The position numbers and the translations under genes were made by a program. 64,000 bases of DNA from IMG/VR virus record IMGVR_UViG_3300024308_000302, positions 124,001-188,000 of that record; one strand, written 5' to 3'. Positions 45,394-59,600 of the stretch are shown here, piece after piece. The notes beneath the pieces were generated by a model. The model did no database searches and had not been told where the DNA came from. It was given only the letters and a program-made list of their open reading frames with translations. Numbering within the stretch: the first letter of the stretch is position 1; each line of letters begins with the position of its first letter.

Positions 45394-45399
45394 ATAATT

Positions 45400-45476
45400 T
45401 GGCCCATGCGGCAGGACTCGAACCTGCGACCATCCGCTTAGAAGGCGGATGCTCTATCCAACTGAGCTACGCACGG
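45400..45476 (-). tRNA. tRNA-Arg(UCU)
   Basis: CCGTGCG...CT-TCT-AA...CGCATGGGCCA. Confidence 0.95.
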
Positions 45477-45485
45477 ATGTTTGTC

Positions 45486-45614: not shown

Positions 45615-45770
45615 TTCGTATTTCCTTGTATGTTTCGTTTTGATGGCTCCATTATAGAGAAATTGGTACTGCATGTAAAGCATTATTTTCGTTTTTTCTA
45701 AATTGTTTTTGATTGATTTTAAACAATAAATTAAAATAAACCAGAGGGCAGATTTAATAGAACCTGAAAA

Positions 45771-46106
45771 CTACAGGTTCATAGCTGACAACTTATGCCG
45801 AGCGAATTCTAAGACTTCTGCAAGTTCAAAACCATCCAAATCACCAAGATGAGCCACAACATGTGGATTGCGAGATGCCCACAGATCACCTTCTTTTTTA
45901 ATCACTGTAGTGCCTTCTGTAGCTCCCCAACCAGCAATCACCGTGCCACGGCAAGCAAAGCCTGTATGACAAACACTGGAACTGCCATCAGCAAAAATGA
46001 TTTCTTTGGGTTCATCAGACATAATAACACCCCAAACATTTTTACTGCAGAGAGCTAGAGCATATTTTTTAATTGTCAGACTTGTGATGTTTTTTACTTG
46101 AGTCAT
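45771..46106 (-). CDS. Hypothetical protein
   Basis: 111-aa ORF. Confidence 0.7.
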   Translation of the reverse strand: MTQVKNITSLTIKKYALALCSKNVWGVIMSDEPKEIIFADGSSSVCHTGFACRGTVIAGWGATEGTTVIKKEGDLWASRNPHVVAHLGDLDGFELAEVLEFARHKLSAMNL

Positions 46107-46247
46107 GTGAAAATACCTATATATCGTTGATTTAATAAAGTAATTTTGGTAAAAATTAGAATTTGAAGCAAGAAGTTTGAATTATACCATATTGAATAAT
46201 CGTAAGCAAAAAAAATCTGGCTAAAACCAGATCTTTAAATTATTGAT

Positions 46248-46610
46248 TTAGGTTACTGCAATTTGATTTGTATATTTTCGTTGATTTTTATAAATGTCAT
46301 TCGCCTTTTCTTCACTGATTTGAACAAGATTGATAAGGGGAGCGTTTTCAAAGACATTATAAAACCAATCAGAAACAGCCTGAGTATAAGTATATCCGGG
46401 GACACAAGAAACTCTTTTAAATTTCAGAATAGGACGGCCACGACCATCAACAACTACGCTCTTAGAAATATACAAAGGAGAGTCTTTTCCTGCATCAGCA
46501 TCAACAAAGAAAGTTGAACCAATGTAAGGATTATTGTTATAACAGATGAACACATAACAAAAACAACCCAAAAGGAATAGAGCACACACAATAAAAATCA
46601 ATGTTGGCAT
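46248..46610 (-). CDS. Membrane-anchored hypothetical protein
   Basis: N-terminal TM; GAGGA SD. Confidence 0.7.
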   Translation of the reverse strand: MPTLIFIVCALFLLGCFCYVFICYNNNPYIGSTFFVDADAGKDSPLYISKSVVVDGRGRPILKFKRVSCVPGYTYTQAVSDWFYNVFENAPLINLVQISEEKANDIYKNQRKYTNQIAVT

Positions 46611-46905
46611 AATTTAATCCTCTTATTGTTCAATTTTTTAAATGTTATAAAGCTAAACTGATATTCAAGAGTATGGTAAAATTTACAAAAGTTGAATGAA
46701 CAGTTGCGAGAGGTTTATTTTATCAAAAAATGACACAAAATACAACAATAAGTGATGAATTCACACAAAAATTAAATAACAAAAAACCCCTTCTAAGAGG
46801 GGCTGTTCAATCTCTATTAATTAGTTTTCTATAAGTAACTTACTGAATGGATAGCTTACATTTTGAACGTTCATTAATTATCAGTAGTTTTATTGTAGTT
46901 GAATT

Positions 46906-46989
46906 TGGTGCCCGAAGCCAGACTCGAACTGGCACGGCTCTCGCCGGAAGATTTTAAGTCTTCTGTGTCTACCATTCCACCATTCGGGC
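46906..46989 (-). tRNA. tRNA-Leu(UAA) copy 3
   Basis: GCCCGAA...CT-TAA-AA...TTCGGGCACCA. Confidence 0.95.
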
Positions 46990-47021
46990 TTAAAAATGGT
47001 CTACCGTAGTAGACCTGTTAA

Positions 47022-47156
47022 TCAGTCTGCGTCTTTATGACGGTTTCGGCGTTTATTGCGTCGGTTACGATCTTCTCGATGAGCACGAGCTTTTTCTGGA
47101 TCTTTTTGTTTACGGCCACTGAAACGTTCTGTTGCATCACCATAAGAACCTTGCAT
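47022..47156 (-). CDS. 44-aa basic peptide (not in ORF track)
   Basis: MQGSYGDATERFSGRKQKDPEKARAHREDRNRRNKRRNRHKDAD; GAGGA SD. Confidence 0.75.
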   Translation of the reverse strand: MQGSYGDATERFSGRKQKDPEKARAHREDRNRRNKRRNRHKDAD

Positions 47157-47247
47157 TTTTTACATCCTCTTTTTTGGGTAATCTTTGTAACTTTGTAGCT
47201 TTATATTATCAACGTTTTTTTAAATGTGCAAGCTTTTTTTTGCAATT

Positions 47248-47466
47248 TTAAGTCAATTTTTGTGCAGCATCGTAGGCAAGTGCAAATGTACGGAAAGCGT
47301 CAATCTCAACAGCTTCACCACCATGAGTTGGAATCTCAAAAAGATGGAAAAGACCACCATCACGGATTTCAATATACCACCCATCATCAATATATGGGGC
47401 ATTTTGAACAATCATATGGCCAGTTGACGGATCAAAAAAAGAAAAAAGCGGAATATTAGTAGACAT
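47248..47466 (-). CDS. Hypothetical protein
   Basis: GAGGTG SD; LFEIPTHGG. Confidence 0.75.
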   Translation of the reverse strand: MSTNIPLFSFFDPSTGHMIVQNAPYIDDGWYIEIRDGGLFHLFEIPTHGGEAVEIDAFRTFALAYDAAQKLT

Positions 47467-47554
47467 AAATCACCTCATAATTTAAACCTATAATAGCATA
47501 AAACACTATAAATTCAAGAAAAAAATTTTGGTGAGGTCTTTATTGTGTTTGAAA

Positions 47555-48550
47555 TTAAATAGAATACATACTGAGCAACATTAAAGTGTCTTCTGACAGT
47601 GGCAATGCAGGTGAAATATCAATCTCTTTTAACATTCTAATCGTTTGCATTGATGGGTATCTTGATAAACAATAATTATATCTGGACATGTAAACTTTTT
47701 TAAATTTATTTACATAGTCAATATAATCATTATTGAGGTACTGTTTATATTGAATAGATAATGTACCAGACTCATATGTTATAATCATGAATCTATCATA
47801 AGATTTAACAGAAGAGTCTGACTTATCACTATCAGATGGATGATGTTCAACAATAAGCTCATACTTTCGTCCATTTTTATACAACAAACATGGATTGTAG
47901 TCATTTTTAAGAATTCTAACTTTTTTTGTATCAATGTATTTTTCAAAACTAATAGCTATATCACGCACAGCTTCCATTGATGTAAAATCACTGAATCGGC
48001 CAACTTCAAAAATCAACTTATCAGCAATATAAAAGTGAGCTTTATTTAAGATGGAACCTGTTTTTGAAAGTAGACAAAAAGAGATACGCTCAACACCAGT
48101 AACAACTGTTTTTTGTAATATTTTAATTTCTGGATAATAATTTTCATCTAAAGTAAGTAAGTTAGGGACTTTAGATAAACTTTGAGAATCGTTGCCTGTC
48201 AATAAGTCCATTAAATCTGGATGATTGTTAAACACGCCTACATAACGATTTTTTAAATAAGGAAAAACAGAAGAATCCATTGTTAAAAGTATGTTTTTAT
48301 TAATACATTCCATAATGAAATCTTGATGATTTAAAGATGATTCATACTTCATACAATAATCCATAGAAACTTGACTAACAAAATCTTTTATACTTAAAAA
48401 TAAGAAGCCATCTAAAAATGTAGCGTTAGCTAATAGATTATTATTTAATTTCAATGAATAGGAATTATTAGTAAATTCTTTAATAGAAGATACAACTGAA
48501 TCTACGTCCTCTTTTTTCTTGAAATAATCCTTTAACTTATTTAAAAACAT
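47555..48550 (-). CDS. Hypothetical protein, C-terminal motif family; paralog of 57692..58852
   Basis: Ends PS...PLSEDTLMLLSMYSI. Confidence 0.75.
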   Translation of the reverse strand: MFLNKLKDYFKKKEDVDSVVSSIKEFTNNSYSLKLNNNLLANATFLDGFLFLSIKDFVSQVSMDYCMKYESSLNHQDFIMECINKNILLTMDSSVFPYLKNRYVGVFNNHPDLMDLLTGNDSQSLSKVPNLLTLDENYYPEIKILQKTVVTGVERISFCLLSKTGSILNKAHFYIADKLIFEVGRFSDFTSMEAVRDIAISFEKYIDTKKVRILKNDYNPCLLYKNGRKYELIVEHHPSDSDKSDSSVKSYDRFMIITYESGTLSIQYKQYLNNDYIDYVNKFKKVYMSRYNYCLSRYPSMQTIRMLKEIDISPALPLSEDTLMLLSMYSI

Positions 48551-48661
48551 AATAATATTAAATGTGCATGATTATAGTATGCAACATAATAATACTTTTT
48601 CAAATAAAAAAGCCAACATTGAATGCTGGCTTATTAATGGAATTATTTAATTAGAAAAGTG

Positions 48662-48913
48662 TTAAATTCTTGATATAAGTAGACAAATTATGAAAGTAAT
48701 AATATAAGCAGAAAGCCAAATAACTTTAAAAGGTCTGGTTTTAATTTTGGTTGCAAAAGGTGTAACACGTTCAACCATTTGAACAACAATTGGATATGAG
48801 GCCAATAACTCTTGTTCACATTTAATAAGAATGTGATTATTTGGACTATGATAACGTTCAAGCAATATAGTAGGTATCAGACAACAACTTACAAACAAAA
48901 AAATAAATAGCAT
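48662..48913 (-). CDS. Small membrane protein
   Basis: Two hydrophobic segments. Confidence 0.6.
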   Translation of the reverse strand: MLFIFLFVSCCLIPTILLERYHSPNNHILIKCEQELLASYPIVVQMVERVTPFATKIKTRPFKVIWLSAYIITFIICLLISRI

Positions 48914-48922
48914 TACACATAC

Positions 48923-49159
48923 CTAATAAATAATAGTAACAAGATGTGAAACACCATTTTTAAGAATAACATCTCTTTTTTCAACTTTTGTTTGAACATT
49001 TTTACCATTATTCCCACAATCAACAGAAACTACAGTATTGAGTGCAGATGCAATGCAAGCATCAGGTAGAATAACCAAGCGAACTTCAATATAGCCAGTC
49101 ATTGTGCCAGCATGCACACTGAATGGAATCAACAACAAAGGCAATATCTTTTTCCACAT
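48923..49159 (-). CDS. Small secreted protein
   Basis: Signal peptide ending VHA; two Cys. Confidence 0.65.
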   Translation of the reverse strand: MWKKILPLLLIPFSVHAGTMTGYIEVRLVILPDACIASALNTVVSVDCGNNGKNVQTKVEKRDVILKNGVSHLVTIIY

Positions 49160-49185
49160 GATTATTTTACCTGTACTGGATGATT

Positions 49186-49524
49186 TTAATTAGGTTTAAT
49201 CAATGAAAGAGAGAATTTGAAAGCTTCATACATGCTTACATATTCTTCACGCACTTTAGTTTCATTGAATGAGCAAACCATAGAGCGGAAATAACGATAA
49301 GCTGGATAAGCTTTAATTCCATCTTGTTTGAGTTCTGCTTTGATAGCTTCTGCAAAGCAAGCAGAAATGAAAATGCCATGACTAACAGAACCTCGACCAG
49401 TAATATCAAAACATTTAAAATCAATATCATCAAAGCTAGCTCGCAATGATTCAATTTGTGCATCACTCAGATCATGAGTAGTTTGCTTAGTGTTATCAAT
49501 AGCATTGTGCATATGCATCTCCAT
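49186..49524 (-). CDS. Hypothetical protein
   Basis: 112-aa ORF. Confidence 0.65.
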   Translation of the reverse strand: MEMHMHNAIDNTKQTTHDLSDAQIESLRASFDDIDFKCFDITGRGSVSHGIFISACFAEAIKAELKQDGIKAYPAYRYFRSMVCSFNETKVREEYVSMYEAFKFSLSLIKPN

Positions 49525-50165
49525 TAGATAAGAATCATTTTTAAGGCTTCAATTTTATCATTTAACATATGTTTTTGCAATGCAACTTTGAAATCTTTTT
49601 CCTGAAATATTTCAAAAAAGGCATCTGGTCTTTTATAAGCTATGTAGCTGAGTCTTATTGTTTCAAGAATTTCATTATAATCAAGAGTATCGTTCACAAT
49701 TTCTACGATACTATTATTTTCAATGTAAAAATCCTTAAAGTATGACAAATAGTTAGACTTTGTATAATATTCAAACCTATTTTCAAGGTGGTATAAATCA
49801 ACTCCAGCAGAGTAAATATGATTTTCATTAAGAATAAAACAACTCCAAGATTCTCTATCAACAGTAAATTGAGATGAAATTTTCATGTTATAATTAGTAT
49901 TAAATGGCAATTTAAGTAAGTAACTAGAAGGTAAGCGAATTTCAAACCCCAGAAATCCACTTTTACCATAAGCCACGTTCAATGTGGCAATTACTGATTG
50001 TTTAAAAGAAAATTCAAATTGTTCATAATCAGCACAATAAACATGAACTACACCGTTATTAATAAGTTGAAACTTATCATTAATAATTTTGAAAAGCTTA
50101 ACAATGGTTTCCTTCTCAACTTTTGGATACCATTGATCTTGATTAACTAATAAGAAATCAATCAT
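49524..50165 (-). CDS. Hypothetical protein, C-terminal motif family
   Basis: Ends IEALKMILI. Confidence 0.72.
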   Translation of the reverse strand: MIDFLLVNQDQWYPKVEKETIVKLFKIINDKFQLINNGVVHVYCADYEQFEFSFKQSVIATLNVAYGKSGFLGFEIRLPSSYLLKLPFNTNYNMKISSQFTVDRESWSCFILNENHIYSAGVDLYHLENRFEYYTKSNYLSYFKDFYIENNSIVEIVNDTLDYNEILETIRLSYIAYKRPDAFFEIFQEKDFKVALQKHMLNDKIEALKMILI

Positions 50166-50166
50166 G

Positions 50167-50682
50167 TTAGATTTCCAGATTTAAATGCATACGCATAAGG
50201 TGTCTAACTCTTGAGATCTCTTCAATAATCCAATCATATTGAGGAACAGTAATGATTTTTGCATTTTGCTGATCTTTACCAAAATAATAATAATGAACAA
50301 GAGGCAATGTTGAATAGGTCAATTCTTTAAGGATATCTTTATTTTGACGAAGTTTACAACGAATGGCTTCACAAACGTCTTCTTTGAAATAATAAGAAAA
50401 AATACCAGAACTGTCATCGTCTTTTACAGGAAGAAGTTTACGACCTAATTCTTTTGCAGCAAGTCCATAGGTCAATTTGATTTCTTCTGAATCAATGCCA
50501 TGTTCCAAAAGAAGACGGAAATACCAAAAGGCTTCTACTGATGCAAATTTACCATATTTGGGATGAACAAAATAACTACGATTAAAGTTAGTTAGCTTTT
50601 TGCCAAGAGCAGTTTTACCACGACTAAACACATTGATGTGATCGACGCCATCATTCAAGGGCGAAAGGATTATGTTTGTCAT
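50167..50682 (-). CDS. NADAR-like protein
   Basis: LTNF...FASVEAFWY...AAKELGR...IRCKLRQNKDILKEL pattern. Confidence 0.6.
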   Translation of the reverse strand: MTNIILSPLNDGVDHINVFSRGKTALGKKLTNFNRSYFVHPKYGKFASVEAFWYFRLLLEHGIDSEEIKLTYGLAAKELGRKLLPVKDDDSSGIFSYYFKEDVCEAIRCKLRQNKDILKELTYSTLPLVHYYYFGKDQQNAKIITVPQYDWIIEEISRVRHLMRMHLNLEI

Positions 50683-50745
50683 AATTAGCTCCTTGTCAAA
50701 TCAGAATTATAACATAATATCAATCGAAAATAAAGAAAAACCCGC

Positions 50746-51318
50746 TTAGAGCGGGTTATCATTCACTTCAACTACACAAGGTTTAATGATGCCTGAATCA
50801 AGCAAAATATCAAGTTCAGTTTTACCAGTGCCTGCCCAAGCAGCAGTTCGAAGATTTTTCGGAGCATCAGGGGTCATGTGAACCACAACAAGACCAGAGC
50901 TTTCAACGCGACCATGATAGCTGGAACATGCTTTCATACGGAGTTCATACAGTTCATCTACCGAAACTTTACAAGCGTAAAGGTGAGTATTTTGAGTAAG
51001 GCGTTTTCCAGTCATATGATGAGAACAAATTAGGGTAAGGTCTTCTGCATTTGGTGTATGCCCAATTTCTTCACCAGACTCACGAAGTGCAGCAGTAATG
51101 AGGTCTTCACCTTCATCTACCTGACCACCCACAAAGCCCATACTACCATCCCAACGAACCATAACACCAAGCAGAGAAACTTTAGCAAACCATGCACCTT
51201 CACCCCATTTGCGGCAGTCTGGGTTAGTTTGATACAGGTGGGTTGGGTCAGCATAAAATGCAATGAACACAGAGTTTTTGTCAGCCATAGTGCCATTAGG
51301 AACGCGGGATACTTGCAT
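50746..51318 (-). CDS. Nudix hydrolase, NUDT16-like
   Basis: MVRWDGSMGFVGGQVD...ALRESGEEIG Nudix box; THLYA. Confidence 0.85.
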   Translation of the reverse strand: MQVSRVPNGTMADKNSVFIAFYADPTHLYQTNPDCRKWGEGAWFAKVSLLGVMVRWDGSMGFVGGQVDEGEDLITAALRESGEEIGHTPNAEDLTLICSHHMTGKRLTQNTHLYACKVSVDELYELRMKACSSYHGRVESSGLVVVHMTPDAPKNLRTAAWAGTGKTELDILLDSGIIKPCVVEVNDNPL

Positions 51319-51372
51319 GGTAAATCCTCAATGATTAATGTAGATCTATTATAATATATCCTGAATAATCAA

Positions 51373-52164
51373 TCAACACCTATTTGGGGATTTTGATTCA
51401 TGCAGGCCATATTTGACAACAAAATCACAAAAGTCAGCATAAGTGATTGAGCCACCTTTTGAGAATAGCTGATTCAAATCTTCTGAAAACGAACGATGGA
51501 GAACAGTCAGATCAACTGGATAGATTTTATTGATGTTTATATTTTGCATATAGCGAGTAGTTTTTTCTAAATTATGCTCAAATTCAAGCTCAATACTTTC
51601 TGCAATCTTAATAATATCATTTTTTCCAATGTGGTGAATACCACTAAACATAGCACCAGATTCAAAGATCCAATGACGTTCAATCAACTTATCTCGATAT
51701 TTCTTACAAGACAACTCAATAACATCTTTCATATCAGACAAGGCATCAAAAATATTTTTTATATCACCATCTTTTACAGCACTATTAAAACCATCAACTT
51801 CATAAGAATCATTAGTATTAAAATCAATGCAATCCATAACGTCAGATTCATGGTCGCATCCATAGACAAGATTATGTAGGAGAGCCACTGTAAATTGATG
51901 ATGCAGTTGAGATTTTAATTCCATTTCAGCTAGCCTCATCTTATAGGTGTTAGATGTTTCTACCAAAACATCATAATTGATAGTCTCAACAAATTTTGGC
52001 ATAAAAGTTTTTACAAAATTATCAAAATCTGGGCCAATAAGATATAAAGGATCATGTGTATTATAGCTATCTACCCAAAAATAAGTAGCACGAGCAGCGA
52101 CTACACCAGACATAAGGTATAGCTGAGGATTGGTCAAAGAACAAATATCAGTAACTCTTGTCAT
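51373..52164 (-). CDS. Hypothetical protein
   Basis: 263-aa ORF. Confidence 0.75.
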   Translation of the reverse strand: MTRVTDICSLTNPQLYLMSGVVAARATYFWVDSYNTHDPLYLIGPDFDNFVKTFMPKFVETINYDVLVETSNTYKMRLAEMELKSQLHHQFTVALLHNLVYGCDHESDVMDCIDFNTNDSYEVDGFNSAVKDGDIKNIFDALSDMKDVIELSCKKYRDKLIERHWIFESGAMFSGIHHIGKNDIIKIAESIELEFEHNLEKTTRYMQNININKIYPVDLTVLHRSFSEDLNQLFSKGGSITYADFCDFVVKYGLHESKSPNRC

Positions 52165-52292
52165 AGATAACCTTTATTAAATTAAAATGGTTGAATTTTC
52201 AATATTCAACCAATTTGGTTGTTAAAAAAAACAATAAAATTTTACTTTTGTCAAGTTTAAAATAGAATTTTTATTCAAATAATTCAATTATT

Positions 52293-52502
52293 TTAAAGAT
52301 CTGTGAATCCACCATAGCCATTTTGCGGATAATGGTCATTTTCAAGCTTGCTCAACGCTGCCTTACGTTTTTGTTCGATAAATGCGGTCGATGAAAAAAT
52401 GGACTTGTTTTTTAATTCATTATCGTATGTTTGATTGATTTGCTGTTTTTCACTACGATAATGATCTTGTGCAGAATAACCAGAATCAGAATTGCTCATC
52501 AT
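52293..52502 (-). CDS. Small hypothetical protein
   Basis: AGGAG SD. Confidence 0.6.
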   Translation of the reverse strand: MMSNSDSGYSAQDHYRSEKQQINQTYDNELKNKSIFSSTAFIEQKRKAALSKLENDHYPQNGYGGFTDL

Positions 52503-52600
52503 ATAATAAATACTCCTTAAACAATAAAAATAATATCAAATAAATAAAAAAAAGGCAATAAAAAAGCCATCATTAGATGGCCTTTTAAACAACCTACATA

Positions 52601-52915
52601 TTAACTTTCGAAAAGCTCACCAATTTTGAGAGCCATCATCATATCTCCTTCGATACGGAGCTTACCACTCATGAAAGCCTGCATACCGTCAAGTTCACCA
52701 GTAGACATAGCATACAGGGTGTCTGAATCAGCTACAAAGGTAGTAGTCGATTCCTTTGGAGCAGTTTCAACAACAGTACAGGCAGAATTTTTAATTTGCA
52801 AGTAGAAGTCTTTGTCATCAGGAACATTGAAATGATAAATCAGATCAAGACCAGAAGCCGCTTCTGCGTTGAATTTAGCAATGAAATTGGTTTGTGCTTG
52901 TGCTGTTTTAGACAT
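52601..52915 (-). CDS. SCP2 sterol/lipid carrier domain protein
   Basis: KFN...GLDL...GELDGMQAFMSGKLRIEGDMMMALKI. Confidence 0.9.
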   Translation of the reverse strand: MSKTAQAQTNFIAKFNAEAASGLDLIYHFNVPDDKDFYLQIKNSACTVVETAPKESTTTFVADSDTLYAMSTGELDGMQAFMSGKLRIEGDMMMALKIGELFES

Positions 52916-52936
52916 ATTGTTTCTCCACGATTAATT

Positions 52937-53023
52937 TGGTGCCCAAAGCCAGACTCGAACTGGCACTCCGATTAAGGAAAGGGATTTTAAGTCCCCCGCG
53001 TCTACCGATTTCACCATTTGGGC
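52937..53023 (-). tRNA. tRNA-Leu(UAA) copy 4
   Basis: GCCCAAA...CT-TAA-AA...TTTGGGCACCA. Confidence 0.95.
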
Positions 53024-53065
53024 GTGCGACTATTCTAATAAAGAATATTAAAACAGTCAATACTT

Positions 53066-53305
53066 TTATGATTTTTCTTGAGATTTTTTGAGTTGATGTT
53101 CTGCATCAAGCTCACGAATAGCAATATCCATTCTCATTCGATCAAGAACAGTGCTCTTTGCAATATCATTAGCATCAGCAATTTGATAAGGATTCAAAAA
53201 AGTTTCAAGATAAGCTAATGCTGTATTCCGGTCAGCCTCATTCATGAAACTCAACATCAATTGGCCACGGTTGAGGTCCAATTCAGTCTTGTCAATTTCA
53301 AGCAT
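53066..53305 (-). CDS. Hypothetical protein
   Basis: GAGG SD. Confidence 0.7.
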   Translation of the reverse strand: MLEIDKTELDLNRGQLMLSFMNEADRNTALAYLETFLNPYQIADANDIAKSTVLDRMRMDIAIRELDAEHQLKKSQEKS

Positions 53306-53439
53306 AATAACCTCTACACCTTATCCGTTGATTGGATGTGTAGTATAACAATATTCTGAAACATGGTCAATCATTAATGATGCGGATTATAGCAAAATTT
53401 TCTCAAAGTTAGCAAGTTAATTCTGTGATTTTGGAGCAG

Positions 53440-54051
53440 TCATTTGTATCGATAGGAAGTCACACGCTGACCTTGGACAAAATGATAAATATCAGTAACA
53501 ACAGAATCTACATATTCAACATAATGTATGCCAAGTGTATTAATGCTTTTGTTATTATATTGTCTGGTATGGATTTGTTTTATCTTGTCATCAATATAAA
53601 TATAAGATGCATACCAATAACCTTTATTTTTATCAACTTTTAAAGATTCCATAATTCGACCATTAACACAAATAACTTCTGATATTGAATAAACCCCATA
53701 ATTTAAATCTAAATCTACTTCAAAAATAGAATCATTCTCTTTAAAATAATAAATAGTATTTGTTTGAACTTGCTGCTTATCAGTAATTGTAATTTGAGCA
53801 ATGAAATCATCAATCATACGATGTTCATACAATGAAGTATATGTAAGAGGCTTAACTCTCAGATATTTAGAATGTTTCACATCCACTAACTCAAGCCCTA
53901 ATGGCTCAAGAGAATAGGTTAAATCTTTAGACCAGAATATTCTGTTGAAAGTAGTTGGTGCTTCATTAATAACTTTTTTAATAAATTCTGGATCTTTTAT
54001 TTTTAAAGAGAAATCATCTATTTTATGTTTAATATCATTCACTGTTAGCAT
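53440..54051 (-). CDS. Hypothetical protein
   Basis: 203-aa ORF. Confidence 0.7.
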   Translation of the reverse strand: MLTVNDIKHKIDDFSLKIKDPEFIKKVINEAPTTFNRIFWSKDLTYSLEPLGLELVDVKHSKYLRVKPLTYTSLYEHRMIDDFIAQITITDKQQVQTNTIYYFKENDSIFEVDLDLNYGVYSISEVICVNGRIMESLKVDKNKGYWYASYIYIDDKIKQIHTRQYNNKSINTLGIHYVEYVDSVVTDIYHFVQGQRVTSYRYK

Positions 54052-54204
54052 AATTATAATGTAATCATTTTGATATTAGTTTAAGTGAAAAGAATGAAAA
54101 AATCAAATATCAAAACAATACATTACAAAAAATATCATATAACAAATTGTATTATTTTAAAATAGATATATAATGATAAATATATATAATAATTTGGGTG
54201 CGAC

Positions 54205-54972
54205 ATGAATAAATCAAAATTAAGTTTCCCAGCAATAGTTGTTTGTATGTTAAGTTACAATGCTTCAAATGCAGCATATGTAGCAAAAGTTCCATTAGAG
54301 ATTCCACAAGGTGGATCGCTACCATATAATAGTATAATAATTGGTTCAGGTAATAAAGAATTAGATTTCGATCCACCTGATCCATTACCCACAGATGATG
54401 GTGTTGTATGCGAATACAATCTAACCAATTCTCCTAATATATCTGTTTATACAGATGGAATAATGAAGAGTCCTGATAATGAATGGATATCCTATAAGGA
54501 GATTTATTATCAAGGACAAAAAGTAATCAATGCTTTTAAAGGCAAAGAAATATTTAGACAAAATGATGAAATGTATAATATAGGTTACTATGAAGTATGT
54601 ATACAAGGTTCTCCATTATATAGTAATCAAAATAATGAAGTAGAAAATCAAGAATGGGATCAAGATGATTGTAGATATAATAACGAAACGGGAACTCAAT
54701 ATTCTTGGACTACCACCACTACAAGTGATGGTAGATATGCATTCCTGAATGCAAGTCTAGGAAGCTTTGGATATGTTACAGCAAATAGTAGTAATATAAT
54801 ATTCCCAGTAGGTACTATAACTGTACCAGAGGGAAAAATATTACCAGAAGGAAAGCAAAGAATAATAATAGGGAACACTGCATTTGATAGAGGTAACTAT
54901 TATGGATCTGTAAATATAGGTAATAATGTTTTCCAAAGCAAATATGAAGTATGTAAAAAAACAGGAAAATAA
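54205..54972 (+). CDS. Secreted protein, K(I/V)PLE family
   Basis: Signal peptide then AYVAKVPLEIPQGGSLPYNSIIIG; two C..YN..YEVC modules. Confidence 0.8.
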   Translation: MNKSKLSFPAIVVCMLSYNASNAAYVAKVPLEIPQGGSLPYNSIIIGSGNKELDFDPPDPLPTDDGVVCEYNLTNSPNISVYTDGIMKSPDNEWISYKEIYYQGQKVINAFKGKEIFRQNDEMYNIGYYEVCIQGSPLYSNQNNEVENQEWDQDDCRYNNETGTQYSWTTTTTSDGRYAFLNASLGSFGYVTANSSNIIFPVGTITVPEGKILPEGKQRIIIGNTAFDRGNYYGSVNIGNNVFQSKYEVCKKTGK

Positions 54973-55004
54973 AAAAAGCCATCAAAAGATGGCTTTCTTA
55001 TTAA

Positions 55005-55358
55005 TCATGTTTCGTTATCTTTTAAAATTTGACATAGCCAGCTTGATGCATCATTAAGATGAGATTCACCAGCGTCAATTTCATCCAGAAGCTTTCGGAA
55101 AGTATCAATATCGTTACAGCGTTCTTTTCGTGTATTTGTAAGCAGTTCAATAGCATCCGCTTTACCAGTTAGATCATCTGGTGATGAACTAAGCGTTGTC
55201 AGAACTCGATCAATACTAATTAAGTCATCACGAACTTTTTTGTAAAGCTTATCAATTGTTTGTCGAATTTCATATAATTTGAAATTAGATTTACCAACAA
55301 GATCATTTGATTCTTTAATAGCTTTTAGTACAAGTTTTTGCATGAATGATAACTCCAA
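55005..55358 (-). CDS. Hypothetical helical protein
   Basis: 117-aa ORF. Confidence 0.65.
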   Translation of the reverse strand: MELSFMQKLVLKAIKESNDLVGKSNFKLYEIRQTIDKLYKKVRDDLISIDRVLTTLSSSPDDLTGKADAIELLTNTRKERCNDIDTFRKLLDEIDAGESHLNDASSWLCQILKDNET

Positions 55359-55574
55359 TTAAATAATAGTCTCAAATCTATCAGAAATGTGATAACCATT
55401 AAGTTTAAGCCAATGTTTAATTTTCCCAGAGTCGTGCTCATGAAAAGTTTGTAATTGCTTGGTTCTCTCAGCATCCCAAAGAATAAAAAGACCTGAGCCG
55501 TATGAAGCAAGATATTCCAGACAAGCTGGTGTTGTGATTGGTTTTGAAAAAATAGATAGGAATTTTTTAAACAT
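55359..55574 (-). CDS. Hypothetical protein
   Basis: Start revised to MFKKF (AGGAG SD); the track extension overlaps tRNA-Leu(CAA). Confidence 0.7.
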   Translation of the reverse strand: MFKKFLSIFSKPITTPACLEYLASYGSGLFILWDAERTKQLQTFHEHDSGKIKHWLKLNGYHISDRFETII

Positions 55575-55609
55575 ATTTATTGAAACTCCTTTAGGTATTA
55601 TTTGAAAAT

Positions 55610-55693
55610 TGGTGCCCAAGGTCGGACTCGAACCGACACGTCTTTCGACAGAGGATTTTGAATCCACCGCGTCTACCATTCCACCACTCGGGC
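55610..55693 (-). tRNA. tRNA-Leu(CAA)
   Basis: GCCCGAG...TT-CAA-AA...CTTGGGCACCA. Confidence 0.93.
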
Positions 55694-55839
55694 TAAAAAT
55701 TCTACCCGCTGCGTAAGCTAAAAGCGTCCTCACACTGAAACACAAGTGTTAATGGCGATTTTGCTATTAACTTGCAACACACTAGTCAATTCGGTGTCCA
55801 ATGAGATTGGATTCAGCAAATTGAACGGCGTAGAAAAAC

Positions 55840-55914
55840 TGGTGCTAAGGACGGGATTCGAACCCGTGACCATCGGATTTAGAGGCCGTTGCTCTGCCGC
55901 TGAGCTACCAAAGC
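55840..55914 (-). tRNA. Amber suppressor-type tRNA(CUA), copy 1
   Basis: Loop CT-CTA-AA; acceptor GCTTTGG/CCTTAGC, ACCA. Confidence 0.85.
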
Positions 55915-55980
55915 ATGTTATTACTATCACTTGTTTTGTTGAGCCATTATACAACAAGACCCAACAAGAAACAAGTATTT

Positions 55981-56328
55981 TTATCGTTTAATTGCGACTT
56001 CCGTATCCCAATCCACTTCAACTCGCTGATTTTCATCGAAATCATAAAGACCTTCATGTCCAGATATTGATTCAATGTAAAGAGTTCGTTCACCACCTCG
56101 CCAACGAGCACTCCAGCTATCAGTATCAAAAATATCAATCAGAATATCTTTTAATGTAGGATACTTTTGTTTAAAAGACTTCCAACTCTTGTCAATCAGG
56201 ATTTCATCAACATGACCACCATTATTACCGAGTTCGGTGGCCCTCATGATACATTGATATTTTTTTGTGCCACGAATTCTGGTTTCTTCAAAGGTTATAT
56301 CTAAACCAATTTCTTCATTCAGAGCCAT
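55981..56328 (-). CDS. Hypothetical protein, YPxLK paralog family
   Basis: EETRIRGT...SWKSFKQKYPTLKDIL...GHEGLYDF. Confidence 0.8.
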   Translation of the reverse strand: MALNEEIGLDITFEETRIRGTKKYQCIMRATELGNNGGHVDEILIDKSWKSFKQKYPTLKDILIDIFDTDSWSARWRGGERTLYIESISGHEGLYDFDENQRVEVDWDTEVAIKR

Positions 56329-56351
56329 AGCAAAATCTCCATGTATAAATT

Positions 56352-56428
56352 TGGTGGGACTTGTAGGACTTGAACCTACGACCTGCCGATTATGAGTCGG
56401 ACGCTCTAACCAACTGAGCTAAAGTCCC
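56352..56428 (-). tRNA. tRNA(CAU), probably Ile2 (lysidine, reads AUA)
   Basis: GGGACTT acceptor; CGA-CTCATAA-TCG and TTCAAG resemble ileX. Confidence 0.85.
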
Positions 56429-56434
56429 GTAATT

Positions 56435-56845
56435 TTACATCAAACTATCAGCATAAAGCTTTTTGTGTTGATCTACAACACAACCAAAAGAATCTTCATA
56501 CAGATAAACAGATGATTTAATGGTTTCAATTGGTCTTGCCAACTCTGAATACATCAAAGTGTCAACACGATATCCACCACGCCCATTTTTACCTTTCCAA
56601 AGCTCCCAAACAAGTACAGCAAGCGTACCAATTTTGAAAACTTTTTCAGGTTTAAAGCTGCTCACATAATCTACACAACCAAAACCAGCAGCTATATGAA
56701 CTTTAATACCTTTTGGATTAACCTTTACTACAGTGCCAGAACATAACGAATAATCAATTAAGACTTTAACATCATCACCAATAGACAATGTTTTAGTTTC
56801 AATAATTTGTTTGATATGTTCTTCATATAGCATAATGTTATCCAT
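56435..56845 (-). CDS. Hypothetical protein
   Basis: WELWKGKNGRGGYR motif. Confidence 0.75.
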   Translation of the reverse strand: MDNIMLYEEHIKQIIETKTLSIGDDVKVLIDYSLCSGTVVKVNPKGIKVHIAAGFGCVDYVSSFKPEKVFKIGTLAVLVWELWKGKNGRGGYRVDTLMYSELARPIETIKSSVYLYEDSFGCVVDQHKKLYADSLM

Positions 56846-56848
56846 AAT

Positions 56849-56923
56849 TGGTGTTAAGGGTGGGATTCGAACCCACGACCATCGGCTTTAGAGGCCGCTG
56901 CTCTACCGCTGAGCTACCAAAAC
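56849..56923 (-). tRNA. Amber suppressor-type tRNA(CUA), copy 2
   Basis: Loop CT-CTA-AA; acceptor GTTTTGG/CCTTAAC, ACCA. Confidence 0.88.
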
Positions 56924-56968
56924 ATTTATTCTATAAATAAGATACAATTAAAGCATATTTATATAAAC

Positions 56969-57053
56969 TGGTGCCCGGTGCCAGACTCGAACTGGCACGA
57001 CTTTCGCCGGAAGATTTTAAGTCTTCTGTGTCTACCGATTTCACCAACCGGGC
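56969..57053 (-). tRNA. tRNA-Leu(UAA) copy 5
   Basis: GCCCGGT/ACCGGGC; CT-TAA-AA. Confidence 0.95.
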
Positions 57054-57331
57054 GTAAAAAATGAATTAAAAATTTGCGTGTGTCGAACTTAACTTTACAA
57101 CACAATCTGATTTACCCAGAGCCTTAGCTAGCCCTGTCTTCACAAGAAGAAAACACACCTAACTCTACAAGAAGTCAGATTTGGTAACTGAATACCTGTG
57201 AAACCATATTGTTGTAAAATAATATCCTTTTTTTCAACCCCTTCGTTTGGGCTGTCAACGTAACATCCGCTGAATAACACCTATATACCTGCAACTGGAT
57301 ATAGTTACAACTTTTTAACTCATTGCAAAAC

Positions 57332-57417
57332 TGGTGCCCGAAGCCGGACTCGAACCGGCACTCCGATTAAGGAAAGGGATTTTAAGTCCCCCGCGTCTAC
57401 CATTTCACCACTCGGGC
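57332..57417 (-). tRNA. tRNA-Leu(UAA) copy 6
   Basis: GCCCGAG...CT-TAA-AA...TTCGGGCACCA. Confidence 0.95.
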
Positions 57418-57586
57418 TTAAATAAAACATCAATATGGTCTACTCTATTTATGTTCGCACCGAGTAGTTTTCCATACTTACAAGCTATATTGGCAACCGA
57501 AGCTGTTATTCCAAAACAAGCCACTTGTAAGAAGTGCTGTTTCATTGCTGCAAGATTTTGTATCTCCGTTTCGTCTTGATGGGCCT

Positions 57587-57615
57587 ATTATAAAGAAGGT
57601 GACATACAAGGTCAA
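57587..57615 (-). promoter_or_regulatory. Sigma70 promoter for Leu/amber tRNA operon
   Basis: TTGACC-17-TATAAT; leader CATCAAGACG shared with the promoter at 2836. Confidence 0.8.
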
Positions 57616-57691
57616 GTGTTTTTTTTGTTTATTTTTCAAATATTTATCGAAAAAATCTTTGACAAAATCTTAAAGAATATGTTAAGGATAA

Positions 57692-58852
57692 TCAAACAAC
57701 AAACATGTCCACGACCATTAAATCATCTTGATTCAAAGGTGTATCTGTTGAAAGTCCCAAATTATCTAATTTTTCTAGGACAGAAAAAGATGGATGAAAT
57801 GACTTGAAATAGTCAAGTTTATTCACAATGACATTATTAATTGACATTTCATGCTCTTTAACCATATCCAAAGTAAATTTTGAAGACGATTTTTTTAATT
57901 TTCCGTAAAAATAAGTATAAGTAACTAATCTATCATTCTTATATCTAATCAAAGGTGTTTCTTTATTCAAAAGACTTTGCCGGAAATTTGAATAGCTGGG
58001 GCTTTCATCAAGAGCACTGGTGTATTCATTAAATTTTGTAATATAGCTTACAGAAAAAACACGATTTGTTTTTCTAAATAAGCAATATTGATTATCTAAC
58101 GTTTTTAAAACCCGAATATTCTCAAGATTTAAATGCTTCAAATAAAACTCTTTTTTACCTTTTAATTGATCGTTAATACCTTCACGAGTATCCACATCAG
58201 CTAAAAATGAAAAAGGACTTGAAACTATCGTTGATGTAAAGAATGATTCAAAATCACTCAGATGAAAAATATTATTATCAACATAATAATAAACAACAGG
58301 ATCAGTTTTTACTTGATCATTATCATATATAGAATAAAAACTATATTTGAAAATATTTTTTAAAATTTTTTTTCTTTTGAAATAAATAATCTGATATTTT
58401 TTATGTTCCCGATAAATATGTGAATGATATTTATCAAAATCATATCTTTTATGAAATTTAGTTGTTTTTTTCACCAATTGATACATATGTTTAAGATGAT
58501 TATCAAAAGGAGTTTGATGAAAAGACTTAAAAAAACCATTATGGAAATTAACAAAGTCAATTAAATTTCTTTTTGGGATTTTAAATAGAATATTATTTTT
58601 AATGGTATCAACAACAAAATCATCTAAAGATAGTTGACTATCATCCATAGGAGTTGCATAGTTTATTTTTAGAAGTTTTCCTAGCTCATCATGTTGGATT
58701 GTGACATACATAATACGATCATCAAAATCAATAAATGCTTTCAAACCATTATTTGCATTGACATCGTAACGACAGTCACCCAGTTGAGTCACAAAAAAAT
58801 CTGGCTCACTGTATAAACAAATATTTAAAAAGTTAATAAGTTTATGGAGCAT
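57692..58852 (-). CDS. Hypothetical protein, C-terminal motif family
   Basis: Ends PS...PLNQDDLMVVDMFVV. Confidence 0.75.
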   Translation of the reverse strand: MLHKLINFLNICLYSEPDFFVTQLGDCRYDVNANNGLKAFIDFDDRIMYVTIQHDELGKLLKINYATPMDDSQLSLDDFVVDTIKNNILFKIPKRNLIDFVNFHNGFFKSFHQTPFDNHLKHMYQLVKKTTKFHKRYDFDKYHSHIYREHKKYQIIYFKRKKILKNIFKYSFYSIYDNDQVKTDPVVYYYVDNNIFHLSDFESFFTSTIVSSPFSFLADVDTREGINDQLKGKKEFYLKHLNLENIRVLKTLDNQYCLFRKTNRVFSVSYITKFNEYTSALDESPSYSNFRQSLLNKETPLIRYKNDRLVTYTYFYGKLKKSSSKFTLDMVKEHEMSINNVIVNKLDYFKSFHPSFSVLEKLDNLGLSTDTPLNQDDLMVVDMFVV

Positions 58853-58919
58853 AATAGATCCCAAAAATTAAATTTATAGAACCTTCATGATATCATAATT
58901 TTTGTAGGCTTACTAGATA

Positions 58920-59198
58920 TTAATCGCCACGAAAAACAAAATTGCTTGGTGGTAAAGATTTAGAAGGGCCTTCTTTATCAGCCAATGGTTGAATGGTGTA
59001 TAAAACGGTATCCCAGCTTTGATACTGAGTGTTAAACATATAGAGTTTTTTTGTTCTCATGTTCTGTTTGTAATTTTGATTATTGTGGTTATCAATGAAA
59101 TAAACAAAACCATCATAGATATAAGTACATTGAAGCGTTGATTTCGCTTTGTTTTCAACGGTTAAAAGATAAAGAGAGCCTTCATTATATGTTGTCAT
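58920..59198 (-). CDS. Hypothetical protein
   Basis: AAGGA SD. Confidence 0.7.
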   Translation of the reverse strand: MTTYNEGSLYLLTVENKAKSTLQCTYIYDGFVYFIDNHNNQNYKQNMRTKKLYMFNTQYQSWDTVLYTIQPLADKEGPSKSLPPSNFVFRGD

Positions 59199-59328
59199 TC
59201 CTTATACTCCATTAGAAAGGTTACAGGCAATTTGAAGATCAATCGCCTACATTTACATTATATAAAGATTCATATTTTTTACAAGGCCGTTTCAACAATA
59301 AATAAAATAAAAATTGTTTTTAGAAAAA

Positions 59329-59436
59329 GATAAACCTCTTCAAACTTACTTACACACATTAACATTAATAGAGCTGCTACCTTCCGGTCCTGACTCGGTT
59401 TTCAATGCAATGTTATAAGGGCCGAAGAGGTCTATC
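59329..59436 (-). ncRNA. ffs: Bacterial small SRP RNA (4.5S)-like gene
   Basis: 108-nt rod with 15-bp terminal helix and domain IV GAG-TCAGGACC-GGAA-GGTAGCAG-CTC. Confidence 0.9.
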
Positions 59437-59523
59437 ATTACAACAACAATAATAACAGAGATTCTAAAATATGCAAGCAAAAAAATAAAAAAAGCCACCA
59501 CAAGGTGACTTTATTTTTTAAGT

Positions 59524-59600
59524 TGGCCCAGCCAGCAGGAATCGAACCTGCAACCGTCCGCTTAGAAGGCGGATGCTCTATCCAATTGAGCTATGGCTGG
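59524..59600 (-). tRNA. tRNA-Arg(UCU)
   Basis: CCAGCCA...CT-TCT-AA...TGGCTGGGCCA. Confidence 0.95.

What the first reader, a model, noticed from the sequence alone, without database searches (positions are those of the whole stretch)
55840..56923. Two amber (CUA) tRNAs with conserved tandem U-U mismatches in the acceptor stem
Seen: both have a canonical CU-CUA-AA loop, A73 and encoded CCA. Their acceptors GCUUUGG/CCUUAGC and GUUUUGG/CCUUAAC covary at 2:71, and the T stems covary (ACGGG/CCCGU vs GUGGG/CCCAC). The U4-U69 and U5-U68 mismatches are retained in both, which argues for selection rather than decay. TAG still acts as a stop here: 21828 and 34082 end in TAG exactly at the family C-terminal motif, so the window is not globally recoded. 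Inference: a distinct identity element for a phage-encoded synthetase, timed readthrough of selected late genes, or interference with host RF1 termination.
Basis: partly seen in the sequence, partly recalled or inferred. Interest (0 to 1): 0.78.

Follow-up and report, generated by a model that had tools for sequence, protein, structure and literature searches.

The report
Conserved amber-suppressor tRNAs with U-U pairs
Two real, conserved tRNA genes that read the UAG stop codon and share an odd weak spot in one stem sit in a tRNA cluster of a giant AT-rich mobile element that still uses UAG as a stop; this is a known kind of puzzle (stop-codon readers in large, normally coded phage-like genomes) with one new structural detail.

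Summary
Both genes (minus strand, 55840-55914 and 56849-56923) are canonical tRNAs with a CU-CUA-AA loop, A73 and encoded CCA. Both have U4.U69 and U5.U68, with compensatory changes at 2:71, 49:65 and 50:64. The refutation test fails: five related replicons (neighbour protein 59-86% identical) carry a syntenic CUA tRNA, and the two U.U positions are unchanged in all 8 distinct sequences.

UAG is not recoded in the 290-kb record or about 40 kb of flank. It is a rare stop (32/474), and paralogs and Pfam domains confirm it as a true stop. No release factor, GlnRS, LysRS or TrpRS/TyrRS gene was found.

The "phage" label is weak. The record is an IMG/VR provirus call cut from a 1.54-Mb contig, has no terminase or capsid hit, and lies next to IncI/Dot-Icm conjugation genes.

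Tandem pyrimidine mismatches in the acceptor stem recur in unrelated viral CUA tRNAs (9/240 clusters against 14/1162 for sense tRNAs, p about 0.01).

Best reading: host-charged (Gln and/or Lys) amber suppressors in a standard-code element, as in phage XacN1. This is the state proposed to precede TAG recoding. The role of the U.U pairs is not shown.

The parts
55840..55914 (-). tRNA(CUA) copy 1 (type A): acceptor GCUUUGG/CCUUAGC with U4.U69 and U5.U68, A27.A43, C31.U39, T stem ACGGG/CCCGU, A73, CCA
   Evidence: ARAGORN; Rfam 57.5 bits; sequence; type-A orthologs in L230, L231, L233, L234 and L236
56849..56923 (-). tRNA(CUA) copy 2 (type B): acceptor GUUUUGG/CCUUAAC with U4.U69 and U5.U68, G27.A43, C31-G39, T stem GUGGG/CCCAC, A73, CCA
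   Evidence: ARAGORN; Rfam 64.7 bits; sequence; the cloverleaf is the minimum-energy fold; type-B ortholog in L230
56435..56845 (-). ORF of 136 aa between copy 2 and tRNA-Met; function unknown. It was used as the synteny anchor to find relatives.
   Evidence: weak ProQ_C hit below the Pfam cut-off; homologs P0001-P0013 on contigs up to 1.85 Mb; ESM Atlas gives leads only
56352..56428 (-). tRNA-Met(CAU), elongator or Ile2 type, between the two CUA tRNAs; 97-100% conserved in relatives
55981..56328 (-). ORF of 115 aa between tRNA-Met and copy 1. It belongs to a small paralog family scattered among the tRNA genes (also 42461-42841 and 44085-44435).
55610..55693 (-). tRNA-Leu(CAA), downstream end of the array
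56969..57053 (-). tRNA-Leu(UAA), directly upstream of copy 2
57332..57417 (-). tRNA-Leu(UAA), first gene of the co-oriented array
57587..57615 (-). Sigma-70-like promoter match (TTGACC, 17 nt, TATAAT; 11 of 12) upstream of the array, with no terminator-like site inside it. Co-transcription is inferred, not shown.
   Evidence: the number of promoter-like sites in the region is not above the shuffled expectation

Best explanation
These are two paralogous, functional amber-suppressor tRNA genes. They sit in a co-oriented tRNA array (Leu-UAA, Leu-UAA, CUA, ORF, Met, ORF, CUA, Leu-CAA) of a giant AT-rich (32% GC) mobile replicon that uses the standard code.

Shown: the tRNA architecture and an anticodon loop of the kind found in efficient amber suppressors; purifying selection on structure; conservation of the gene, the CUA anticodon and the two U.U positions in related replicons; UAG as a rare but real stop; and no synthetase or release factor in the 290 kb examined.

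Inferred: the tRNAs are charged by host synthetases, most likely GlnRS and/or LysRS. Both enzymes accept U35 amber tRNAs; A73 favours Lys, and C31-G39 (copy 2 only) shifts acceptance from Lys towards Gln. They then read UAG at some level. In a low-GC element where UAG is already the rarest stop, this would buffer amber nonsense mutations and extend the few UAG-terminated proteins by a median of 14 residues. This is the 'suppressor acquired before recoding' state of the Borges et al. model, and the same situation as phage XacN1.

The U4.U69/U5.U68 tandem is an inherited weakening of the acceptor helix, from about -9 to -14 kcal/mol down to about -3 to -5. It is tolerated and may be selected. 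My preferred guess is that it makes the acceptor end easier to open for GlnRS-type charging, or tunes suppressor activity down. That step is speculation.
For: The tRNAs are real and canonical. The paralogs differ at 9 positions: 6 form three compensatory pairs, 1 restores 31:39, and none breaks a pair. Syntenic CUA tRNAs occur in relatives whose neighbour protein is 59-86% identical; 4:69 and 5:68 are non-standard in 8/8 distinct sequences, while 27:43 and 31:39 flip between mismatch and pair. For the standard code: TAG ends 32/474 ORFs; treating TAG as sense gains less coverage than the TGA control; extensions after TAG (median 14 codons) match those after TAA and TGA (13); fused-ORF candidates are not enriched. 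TAG-ending ORFs have paralogs ending in TAA or TGA at the same C-terminus, and Pfam domains end at the C-terminus. No RF-1 domain, tRNA-synt_1c, tRNA-synt_2 or tRNA-synt_1b was found in a six-frame search, and none among the 123 ORFs scanned. Literature: XacN1 has two CUA tRNAs, the standard code and no targets found (PMC5852040). Low GC, TAG depletion, then suppressor acquisition is the model of 10.1101/2021.08.26.457843. U35 amber tRNAs take Lys or Gln, A73 favours Lys, and a weakened 1-72 pair gives Gln insertion (PMC9976931). C31-G39 lowers Lys and raises Gln acceptance (PMC1483225).
Against: There is no evidence of expression, charging or suppression; the RNA-run contigs were uninformative. 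Only about 330 kb of a replicon of at least 1.54 Mb could be read, so recoded genes, a synthetase or a release factor elsewhere cannot be excluded. One related lineage (L233, L239-L241) has C33 instead of the near-universal U33, and most copies have only 3-4 Watson-Crick pairs in the anticodon stem. Both features are odd for an efficient decoder. The CUA tRNA evolves faster than the neighbouring tRNA-Met (93% against 99% mean identity). After a TAG stop, the next in-frame stop is TAG again in about 6 of 32 cases, so there is no sign of selection against readthrough.
Confidence: 0.5

Rival explanations
1. The replicon is partly recoded. Genes outside the 290-kb record, such as a late or structural module, carry in-frame TAG, and the CUA tRNAs are the code-switch device, as in code-15 phages.
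For: In recoded phages the in-frame stops are concentrated in structural and lysis genes, while early genes keep the standard code. The record has no terminase and no capsid hit, so such a module, if it exists, was not examined. TAG is already depleted here (6.8% of stops; 0 of 34 in the flank).
Against: About 330 kb was inspected, including full-length conserved genes for FtsZ, the type IV secretion and pilus systems, PepA, a Na/H exchanger and RNA ligase. None has an in-frame TAG. TAG is a working stop in 32 ORFs. No RF2 or RF1 gene was found. Gene calls in relatives around the tRNAs are intact and of equal length.
Confidence: 0.15
2. The selected role is not decoding. The CUA tRNAs would act as decoys, antidotes or spare parts in a conflict over tRNA cleavage, for instance against anticodon nucleases aimed at U35 tRNAs (Lys, Gln, Glu), alongside the element's other tRNA-related genes.
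For: The element carries a T4 Rnl1-type RNA ligase, PTH2 and a colicin-DNase/WHH nuclease. Relatives have a PBECR5 nuclease-domain protein directly beside the array. tRNA-Leu(UAA), Arg(UCU) and Met are present in many copies. One lineage has C33, and the anticodon stems are weak.
Against: The CU-CUA-AA loop, A73 and CCA are exactly what a working suppressor needs. The anticodon itself is invariant in all relatives. No nuclease is known to target a CUA tRNA. The redundancy of the other tRNAs is explained more simply as supply for AT-rich codons.
Confidence: 0.15
3. One reading: the U.U tandem is an identity element that makes the tRNA the private substrate of an element-encoded synthetase (an orthogonal pair).
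For: The U.U pairs are invariant across the family. Only these two of the record's 35 tRNAs have them. About 1.2 Mb of the replicon was not searched.
Against: No synthetase domain is present in 290 kb. Similar tandem pyrimidine mismatches occur in CUA tRNAs, and some sense tRNAs, of unrelated phages with different GC content and no shared genes. That fits a general structural effect better than a private code.
Confidence: 0.07
4. They are decaying or neutral passenger genes: mutated copies of a sense tRNA with no function.
For: Both the acceptor and anticodon stems have mismatches. The gene evolves faster than the neighbouring tRNA-Met.
Against: There are three compensatory double changes and no pair-breaking changes between the paralogs. 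Presence, anticodon, D arm and T arm are conserved in replicons whose neighbour protein has diverged to 59% identity. Both paralog types are kept in the window and in L230.
Confidence: 0.05

Closest known systems
The two tRNA(CUA) 'tRNA-Sup' genes of Xanthomonas jumbo phage XacN1 (Yoshikawa et al. 2018, PMC5852040)
   Same: A pair of CUA tRNAs sits inside a large tRNA cluster of a very large element that uses the standard code. In-silico readthrough of amber stops reveals no targets (here). XacN1 copy B has the same 5' acceptor strand start, GCUUU.
   Different: Both XacN1 acceptor stems are fully paired. XacN1 is a proven virion-forming phage. Here the phage status is not established, and the U.U tandem is conserved across the family.
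Suppressor tRNA(CUA) of TAG-recoded (code 15) phages such as crAss-like and Lak (Ivanova 2014; Borges et al., 10.1101/2021.08.26.457843)
   Same: A mobile element encodes a CUA tRNA. The genome is low in GC with TAG the rarest stop. Charging is presumed to be by host GlnRS.
   Different: No in-frame TAG was seen in any gene, TAG is a working stop, and there is no RF2 gene. At most this is the proposed pre-recoding stage.
Laboratory E. coli amber suppressors of the U35 class (supE; su7 from tRNA-Trp; engineered tRNA(CUA) genes of Normanly, Kleina and Miller)
   Same: They share the CU-CUA-AA loop. Identity is expected to be set by U35, the discriminator base, the stability of the acceptor end and the 31:39 pair, giving Gln or Lys.
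   Different: Those arise by anticodon mutation of a chromosomal sense tRNA. These are stand-alone conserved genes with a tandem U.U in the acceptor stem, which none of the classical suppressors has (own knowledge).
CUA tRNAs with tandem pyrimidine mismatches in other huge phages: Sinorhizobium phage Phosso (U.U at 3:70 and 4:69), Pectobacterium phage CBB (U.C at 4:69, U.U at 5:68), and IMG/VR contigs L141 and L389 (U.U at 4:69 and 5:68) and L061 (5:68 and 6:67)
   Same: The same kind of defect occurs at the same or adjacent acceptor positions in an otherwise canonical CUA tRNA.
   Different: The flanks are unrelated, the GC contents are different and higher (38-51%), and there is no detectable protein similarity. 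The feature is recurrent rather than inherited from a common element.

Membership tests
Bacterial-type elongator tRNA (Rfam RF00005) | Cloverleaf with U8, A14, G18G19, a T-loop UUCGAAU, a 7-nt anticodon loop with U33 and a purine at 37, and a score above the gathering threshold | tested here: met
   57.5 and 64.7 bits against 29; ARAGORN cloverleaves; sequences. One related lineage has C33.
Amber-suppressor tRNA | Anticodon CUA in register at positions 34-36 | tested here: met
   invariant in 8 distinct family sequences
Amber-suppressor tRNA | Is aminoacylated and reads UAG on the ribosome | not testable with these tools
   Needs a reporter assay with mass spectrometry, or a charging assay. 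The RNA-run contigs were uninformative.
tRNA-Pyl (ARAGORN's default label for CUA) | Atypical body: 3-nt variable loop, 6-bp anticodon stem, small D loop without G18G19, no T-loop consensus, and an accompanying pylS | tested here: not met
   The body is canonical, with G18G19, a 5-nt variable loop, a 5-position anticodon stem and the T-loop consensus. No synthetase domain was found among the scanned ORFs. The features of tRNA-Pyl are from my own knowledge.
Code-15 (TAG to Gln) recoded phage system | In-frame TAG codons in genes, and coding density that rises when TAG is read as sense | tested here: not met
   Coverage goes from 0.849 to 0.864 for TAG as sense, against 0.876 for the TGA control; there is no excess of TAG-joined ORFs; TAG is confirmed as a stop. 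This holds only for the roughly 330 kb read.
Code-15 (TAG to Gln) recoded phage system | Accessory code-change genes (RF2, a synthetase) | tested here: not met
   (290-kb record only)
Standard-code jumbo-phage suppressor tRNA (XacN1 type) | CUA tRNA or tRNAs inside a tRNA cluster of a genome that uses TAG as a stop | tested here: met
Standard-code jumbo-phage suppressor tRNA (XacN1 type) | The carrier is a bacteriophage (capsid, terminase, portal) | tested here: inconclusive
   IMG/VR calls it a provirus at 96% CheckV completeness. However, there is no Terminase_6N or 6C, and only one partial 'virion structural protein' PHROG hit among the 98 largest ORFs. The sequence lies in a 1.54-Mb contig next to IncI/Dot-Icm conjugation genes.

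The most novel reading that the evidence does not exclude
Tandem pyrimidine-pyrimidine mismatches in the middle of the acceptor stem are a convergent, selected signature of virus-borne amber-suppressor tRNAs. They would control who charges the tRNA, or how well: for example by loosening the acceptor end so that host GlnRS accepts a G1-C72/A73 tRNA, or by escaping host tRNA surveillance. In this element the two paralogs (C31.U39 against C31-G39) would then insert different amino acids (Lys against Gln) at UAG.
Probability: 0.15. Interest if true: 0.7.

Novelty: new variant of a known kind. Interest (0 to 1): 0.45.

Why it matters
Suppressor tRNAs in large mobile genomes that have not changed their code remain unexplained: XacN1's authors found no targets. 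They are also the proposed first step towards stop-codon reassignment. This family gives a clean case of that state. It has two conserved paralogs, a standard code and several diverged relatives. It adds one concrete, testable structural feature, the U4.U69/U5.U68 tandem, which appears about three times more often in viral CUA tRNAs than in sense tRNAs. If the mismatch sets charging identity or efficiency, it would explain how a mobile element can install a stop-codon reader using only host enzymes. It could also be a useful design element for orthogonal suppressors. If the mismatch does nothing, this is an ordinary further example of a known oddity.

Tried and rejected
- An exact-pattern search for the D-arm-to-variable-loop sequence found nothing in IMG/VR or GTDB genomes. 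Close relatives were reached only through homologs of the neighbouring ORF.
- tblastn of two large ORFs against GenBank phages, and the search for related loci with the 633-aa ORF in IMG/VR, found nothing. DNA similarity to phages is limited to tRNA genes (PA5oct group).
- Kin search by 'relatives' or by record handles is not available for this record.
- Recoding was rejected for the sequence in hand.
- A tRNA-Pyl identity was rejected on structure.
- No theta/HDV-like ribozyme or other Rfam family lies next to the tRNAs, even at E up to 1.
- RNA-labelled runs mostly gave chimeric tRNA-like contigs from other organisms. One metatranscriptome contig joins a tRNA-Met and a CUA tRNA with an 82-nt spacer, but DNA carry-over cannot be excluded.
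- The ancestry of the tRNA body stays ambiguous (Lys-like, Trp-like or Arg-like). Nearest-neighbour labels are dominated by other CUA tRNAs because of how the sample was drawn.
- ESM Atlas look-ups of the two flanking small ORFs gave only sub-threshold leads to phage proteins.
- The sample and run accessions appear in no held paper.
- Walking about 40 kb beyond the record's start showed conjugation and pilus genes and ORFans, but nothing that settles plasmid versus chromosome.
Full report
**1. The observation**

ARAGORN reports 20 tRNA genes in the window, all on the minus strand. Two have anticodon CUA, at 55840-55914 and 56849-56923. Rfam's tRNA model scores them 57.5 and 64.7 bits against a gathering score of 29.

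Read from the sequence and from ARAGORN's cloverleaves, both have:
- U8, A14, G18G19 and a 5-nt variable loop UGGUC;
- the T loop UUCGAAU;
- the anticodon loop C32-U33-C34-U35-A36-A37-A38;
- A73 and an encoded CCA.

The acceptor stems are GCUUUGG/CCUUAGC and GUUUUGG/CCUUAAC. U4 faces U69 and U5 faces U68 in both, and 2:71 covaries (C-G against U-A). The T stems covary at 49:65 and 50:64.

I add two points. Position 27:43 is mismatched in both copies. Position 31:39 is C.U in copy 1 and C-G in copy 2.

Copy 2's minimum-energy fold is the cloverleaf. Copy 1's cloverleaf lies 4 kcal/mol above an alternative fold. The acceptor helices are weak: about -5.4 and -3.0 kcal/mol, against -9 to -14 for other tRNAs of the element or for a U-A version.

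Among the 35 tRNAs of the whole record, only these two have a tandem acceptor mismatch.

**2. The carrier**

The window is positions 124001-188000 of a 290,157-bp record with 32% GC. The tools describe it as an IMG/VR provirus with 96% CheckV completeness. It has no terminal repeat, and it begins and ends exactly at gene boundaries.

Gene content:
- About 474 ORFs, mostly small (mean 173 aa, maximum 633 aa), with 386 on one strand.
- Among the 98 largest ORFs and 35 small ORFs near the tRNAs, Pfam and PHROGs find no terminase, capsid, portal, polymerase, synthetase or release factor.
- The hits are homing/HNH endonucleases, TnpB, a T4 Rnl1-type RNA ligase, a metallophosphoesterase, an M17 peptidase, a Na/H exchanger, PTH2, a colicin-DNase/WHH nuclease, NUDIX, and one partial 'virion structural protein' match.
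- Six-frame searches for Terminase_6N and Terminase_6C found nothing.

The same DNA, 100% identical over 6.4 kb, lies in a JGI contig of 1,539,155 bp. Just outside the record's start are FtsZ, an SLT transglycosylase and an SSB-like gene. Next comes an IncI/Dot-Icm-type conjugation and thin-pilus region with PilS, DotD, TraI, two to three T2SSE ATPases, IcmT, a PilN-type secretin, T2SSF, DotM and an ankyrin protein. This flank has the same 31% GC, and its stops are TAA 32, TGA 2, TAG 0.

The FtsZ is at most 56% identical to any species genome searched. Near-identical DNA occurs in subsurface, soil, freshwater, food, silage, plant and wastewater runs.

So the carrier is a giant AT-rich replicon with phage-like dark matter and conjugation genes. 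I could not decide whether it is a phage, a megaplasmid or a chromosome.

**3. The genetic code**

- With code 11, non-overlapping ORFs of at least 60 aa cover 84.9% of the record. Their stops are TAA 334, TGA 108 and TAG 32.
- Reading TAG as sense raises coverage to 86.4%. That is less than the same trick with TGA (87.6%) or TAA (89.3%).
- After a TAG stop, the in-frame open stretch has a median of 14 codons, against 13 after TAA and TGA. Extensions of at least 30 codons are no more frequent: 5/32 for TAG, 60/334 for TAA and 14/108 for TGA.
- ORF pairs joined by a single TAG are not enriched over those joined by TGA.
- TAG-terminated ORFs have paralogs that end in TAA or TGA at the same alignment position, for example 389 aa against 362 aa, 214 against 215, and 116 against 115.
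- A TnpB and a NAGPA protein end their Pfam domains at the TAG-defined C-terminus.

UAG is therefore a rare but genuine stop in everything I could read. No RF-1 domain, tRNA-synt_1c (Glu/Gln), tRNA-synt_2 (Lys/Asp/Asn) or tRNA-synt_1b (Trp/Tyr) is encoded in the record.

**4.

The 136-aa ORF between copy 2 and tRNA-Met has homologs at 86, 74, 64, 62, 60 and 59% identity. They lie on contigs up to 1.85 Mb. Every locus fetched has a CUA tRNA in the same array, and the closest relative (L230) has both paralog types.

The family gives 8 distinct CUA tRNA sequences:
- G1-C72, U3-A70, G6-C67 and G7-C66 never vary.
- 2:71, 49:65 and 50:64 covary.
- 4:69 and 5:68 are U.U in 8 of 8.
- 27:43 is a mismatch in six sequences and U-A in two.
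- 31:39 is C.U, C.A, C-G or U-A.

Two cautions apply. First, the whole tRNA is 93% conserved, so four invariant columns alone do not prove selection for the mismatch. The contrast with 27:43 and 31:39, which do get 'repaired' in some lineages, is suggestive only. Second, the CUA tRNA evolves faster than the adjacent tRNA-Met (93% against 99%), and one lineage has C33 in place of U33.

**5. Is the mismatch special to this family?**

It is not. Among GenBank phages, CUA tRNAs differ:
- XacN1 (two copies), RAS14 and DLP_5 have fully paired acceptors.
- Phosso has U.U at 3:70 and 4:69.
- CBB has U.C at 4:69 and U.U at 5:68.

I also sampled IMG/VR with four anticodon-loop plus T-loop patterns. This gave 291 unique CUA tRNAs and 1,294 unique sense tRNAs from the same loci.

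| Measure | CUA tRNAs | Sense tRNAs | Statistic |
|---|---|---|---|
| Tandem mismatch at acceptor positions 2-7 | 10 (3.4%) | 14 (1.1%) | Fisher p = 0.006 |
| Tandem U.U | 4 | 7 | p = 0.13 |
| After clustering at 85% identity: clusters with tandem mismatch | 9/240 | 14/1162 | p = 0.01, odds ratio 3.2 |
| After clustering: pyrimidine-pyrimidine tandems | 8/240 | 10/1162 | p = 0.006 |

The overall rate of any acceptor mismatch does not differ between the classes (10.3% against 8.6%).

The carriers of such tRNAs (L141, L061, Phosso, CBB) share no detectable genes with this element and have different, higher GC contents. The feature is therefore recurrent and modestly enriched in the CUA class. 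The sample was pattern-selected and the test is post hoc, so I treat this as a lead.

**6. Mechanism**

The loop CU-CUA-AA is that of efficient amber suppressors (own knowledge: Yarus's extended anticodon, supF).

With a short variable arm, U35 and A73, the likely chargers in a proteobacterial host are LysRS and GlnRS:
- U35 amber tRNAs insert Lys or Gln, and A73 favours Lys.
- Weakening the 1-72 pair turned tRNA-Asn amber derivatives into Gln inserters (PMC9976931).
- A C31-G39 pair lowers Lys and raises Gln acceptance in a 'seesaw' (PMC1483225).

The two window paralogs differ exactly at 31:39, so they may differ in the residue they insert.

The tandem U.U leaves only three pairs above an internal loop. 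That could ease opening of the acceptor end by a class I enzyme such as GlnRS, or it could simply lower the tRNA's activity or stability. Both ideas are inference.

At the level of the element, the picture matches XacN1: two CUA tRNAs, the standard code and no targets found (PMC5852040). It also matches the evolutionary model in which low GC depletes TAG and a suppressor is acquired before in-frame TAGs accumulate (10.1101/2021.08.26.457843).

**7. What remains open**

Expression is not shown. A strong sigma-70-like match lies upstream of the array and no terminator lies inside it. The RNA-labelled public runs gave only fragments.

About 1.2 Mb of the replicon could not be read.

The element's RNA ligase, PTH2 and nuclease genes, and the PBECR5 nuclease beside the array in relatives, keep a tRNA-conflict role alive (rival 2).

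**8. Verdict**

The specific mechanisms it proposed lack support.

This is a new variant of a known kind. Its interest is moderate and rests mainly on the recurrent acceptor-stem mismatch and on the unusual carrier.

Noticed in passing
whole record G000 (window = 124001-188000); flank loci L144, L225, L226, L526: The 'virus record' is a 290-kb provirus call inside a 1,539,155-bp contig, and relatives sit on 1.84-1.85-Mb contigs. It has no terminase or capsid hit. It is flanked by FtsZ, SLT and SSB genes and an IncI/Dot-Icm-type conjugation plus thin-pilus region of the same 31% GC. Near-identical DNA occurs in soil, subsurface, freshwater, food, silage, plant and wastewater runs. This giant AT-rich replicon of unclear nature may be more interesting than the tRNAs.
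   Followed up: partly
window 59334-59429 (-): A full-length bacterial small SRP (4.5S) RNA, 58.7 bits against a gathering score of 40, lies inside the tRNA-rich region between an ORF and tRNA-Arg(UCU).
   Followed up: no
window 39041-39117 (-): A tRNA with an 8-nt anticodon loop (AUUUUGCC), which ARAGORN reads as the four-base anticodon UUUG (Lys or Gln type). It could be a frameshift-suppressor-like or nuclease-evading variant. A second odd tRNA with a 6-nt loop lies at G000 35401-35477, outside the window.
   Followed up: no
whole record; window 44812-59600: The tRNA set is highly redundant: 10 Leu(UAA), 4-5 Arg(UCU), 4 elongator-type Met/Ile2(CAU) and 3 initiator-like Met with a 1:72 mismatch. 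These are scattered among small ORFs, with repeated Leu-Arg units about 94% identical at G000 36.5 kb and 169.3 kb.
   Followed up: partly
window 42861-43331 (-): An archaeal/eukaryotic-type peptidyl-tRNA hydrolase (PTH2, 63 bits) is encoded among the tRNA genes.
   Followed up: partly
window 28451-29116 (-); G000 236134-236235: A protein with a colicin-DNase/WHH nuclease domain (57.5 bits), plus a second weak copy elsewhere in the record.
   Followed up: no
G000 66183-67316 (-), outside the window: A T4 Rnl1-type RNA ligase (PF09511, 92.7 bits; phrog_562), the enzyme family T4 uses to repair cleaved tRNA. A metallophosphoesterase (phrog_1649) lies at G000 10423-11178.
   Followed up: no
L233 5580-5655; L239, L240 and L241 likewise: In one related lineage the CUA tRNA has C33 instead of the near-universal U33, together with U31-A39 and one extra D-loop base. 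The acceptor U.U pairs are unchanged.
   Followed up: partly
L231, L233, L234, L236 and L239, about 3245-4740: In relatives, a 494-497-aa protein with a PBECR5 domain (Barnase/EndoU/colicin E5-D/RelE-like nuclease) sits directly upstream of the tRNA-Arg, ORF, tRNA-Met, tRNA(CUA) array. The window's 390-aa ORF at 57692-58864 in the matching place has no Pfam hit.
   Followed up: no
window 44085-44435, 45771-46106, 48923-49159; G000 264692-266449: Four TAG-terminated ORFs are followed by long in-frame open stretches (113, 94, 86 and 62 codons). For the first, equal-length paralogs show that the TAG is the true end. The others were not tested by homology.
   Followed up: partly
G000 251501-253717 (-), outside the window: Two ORFs of about 360-370 aa lie in the same frame, separated by a single TGA.
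   Followed up: no
window 55835-56409, run X18: A 288-nt contig from a wastewater metatranscriptome joins a tRNA-Met and a CUA tRNA of this family with only 82 nt between them, with no intervening ORF and base changes at 55867-55868. This fits a transcribed relative, but DNA carry-over cannot be excluded.
   Followed up: no
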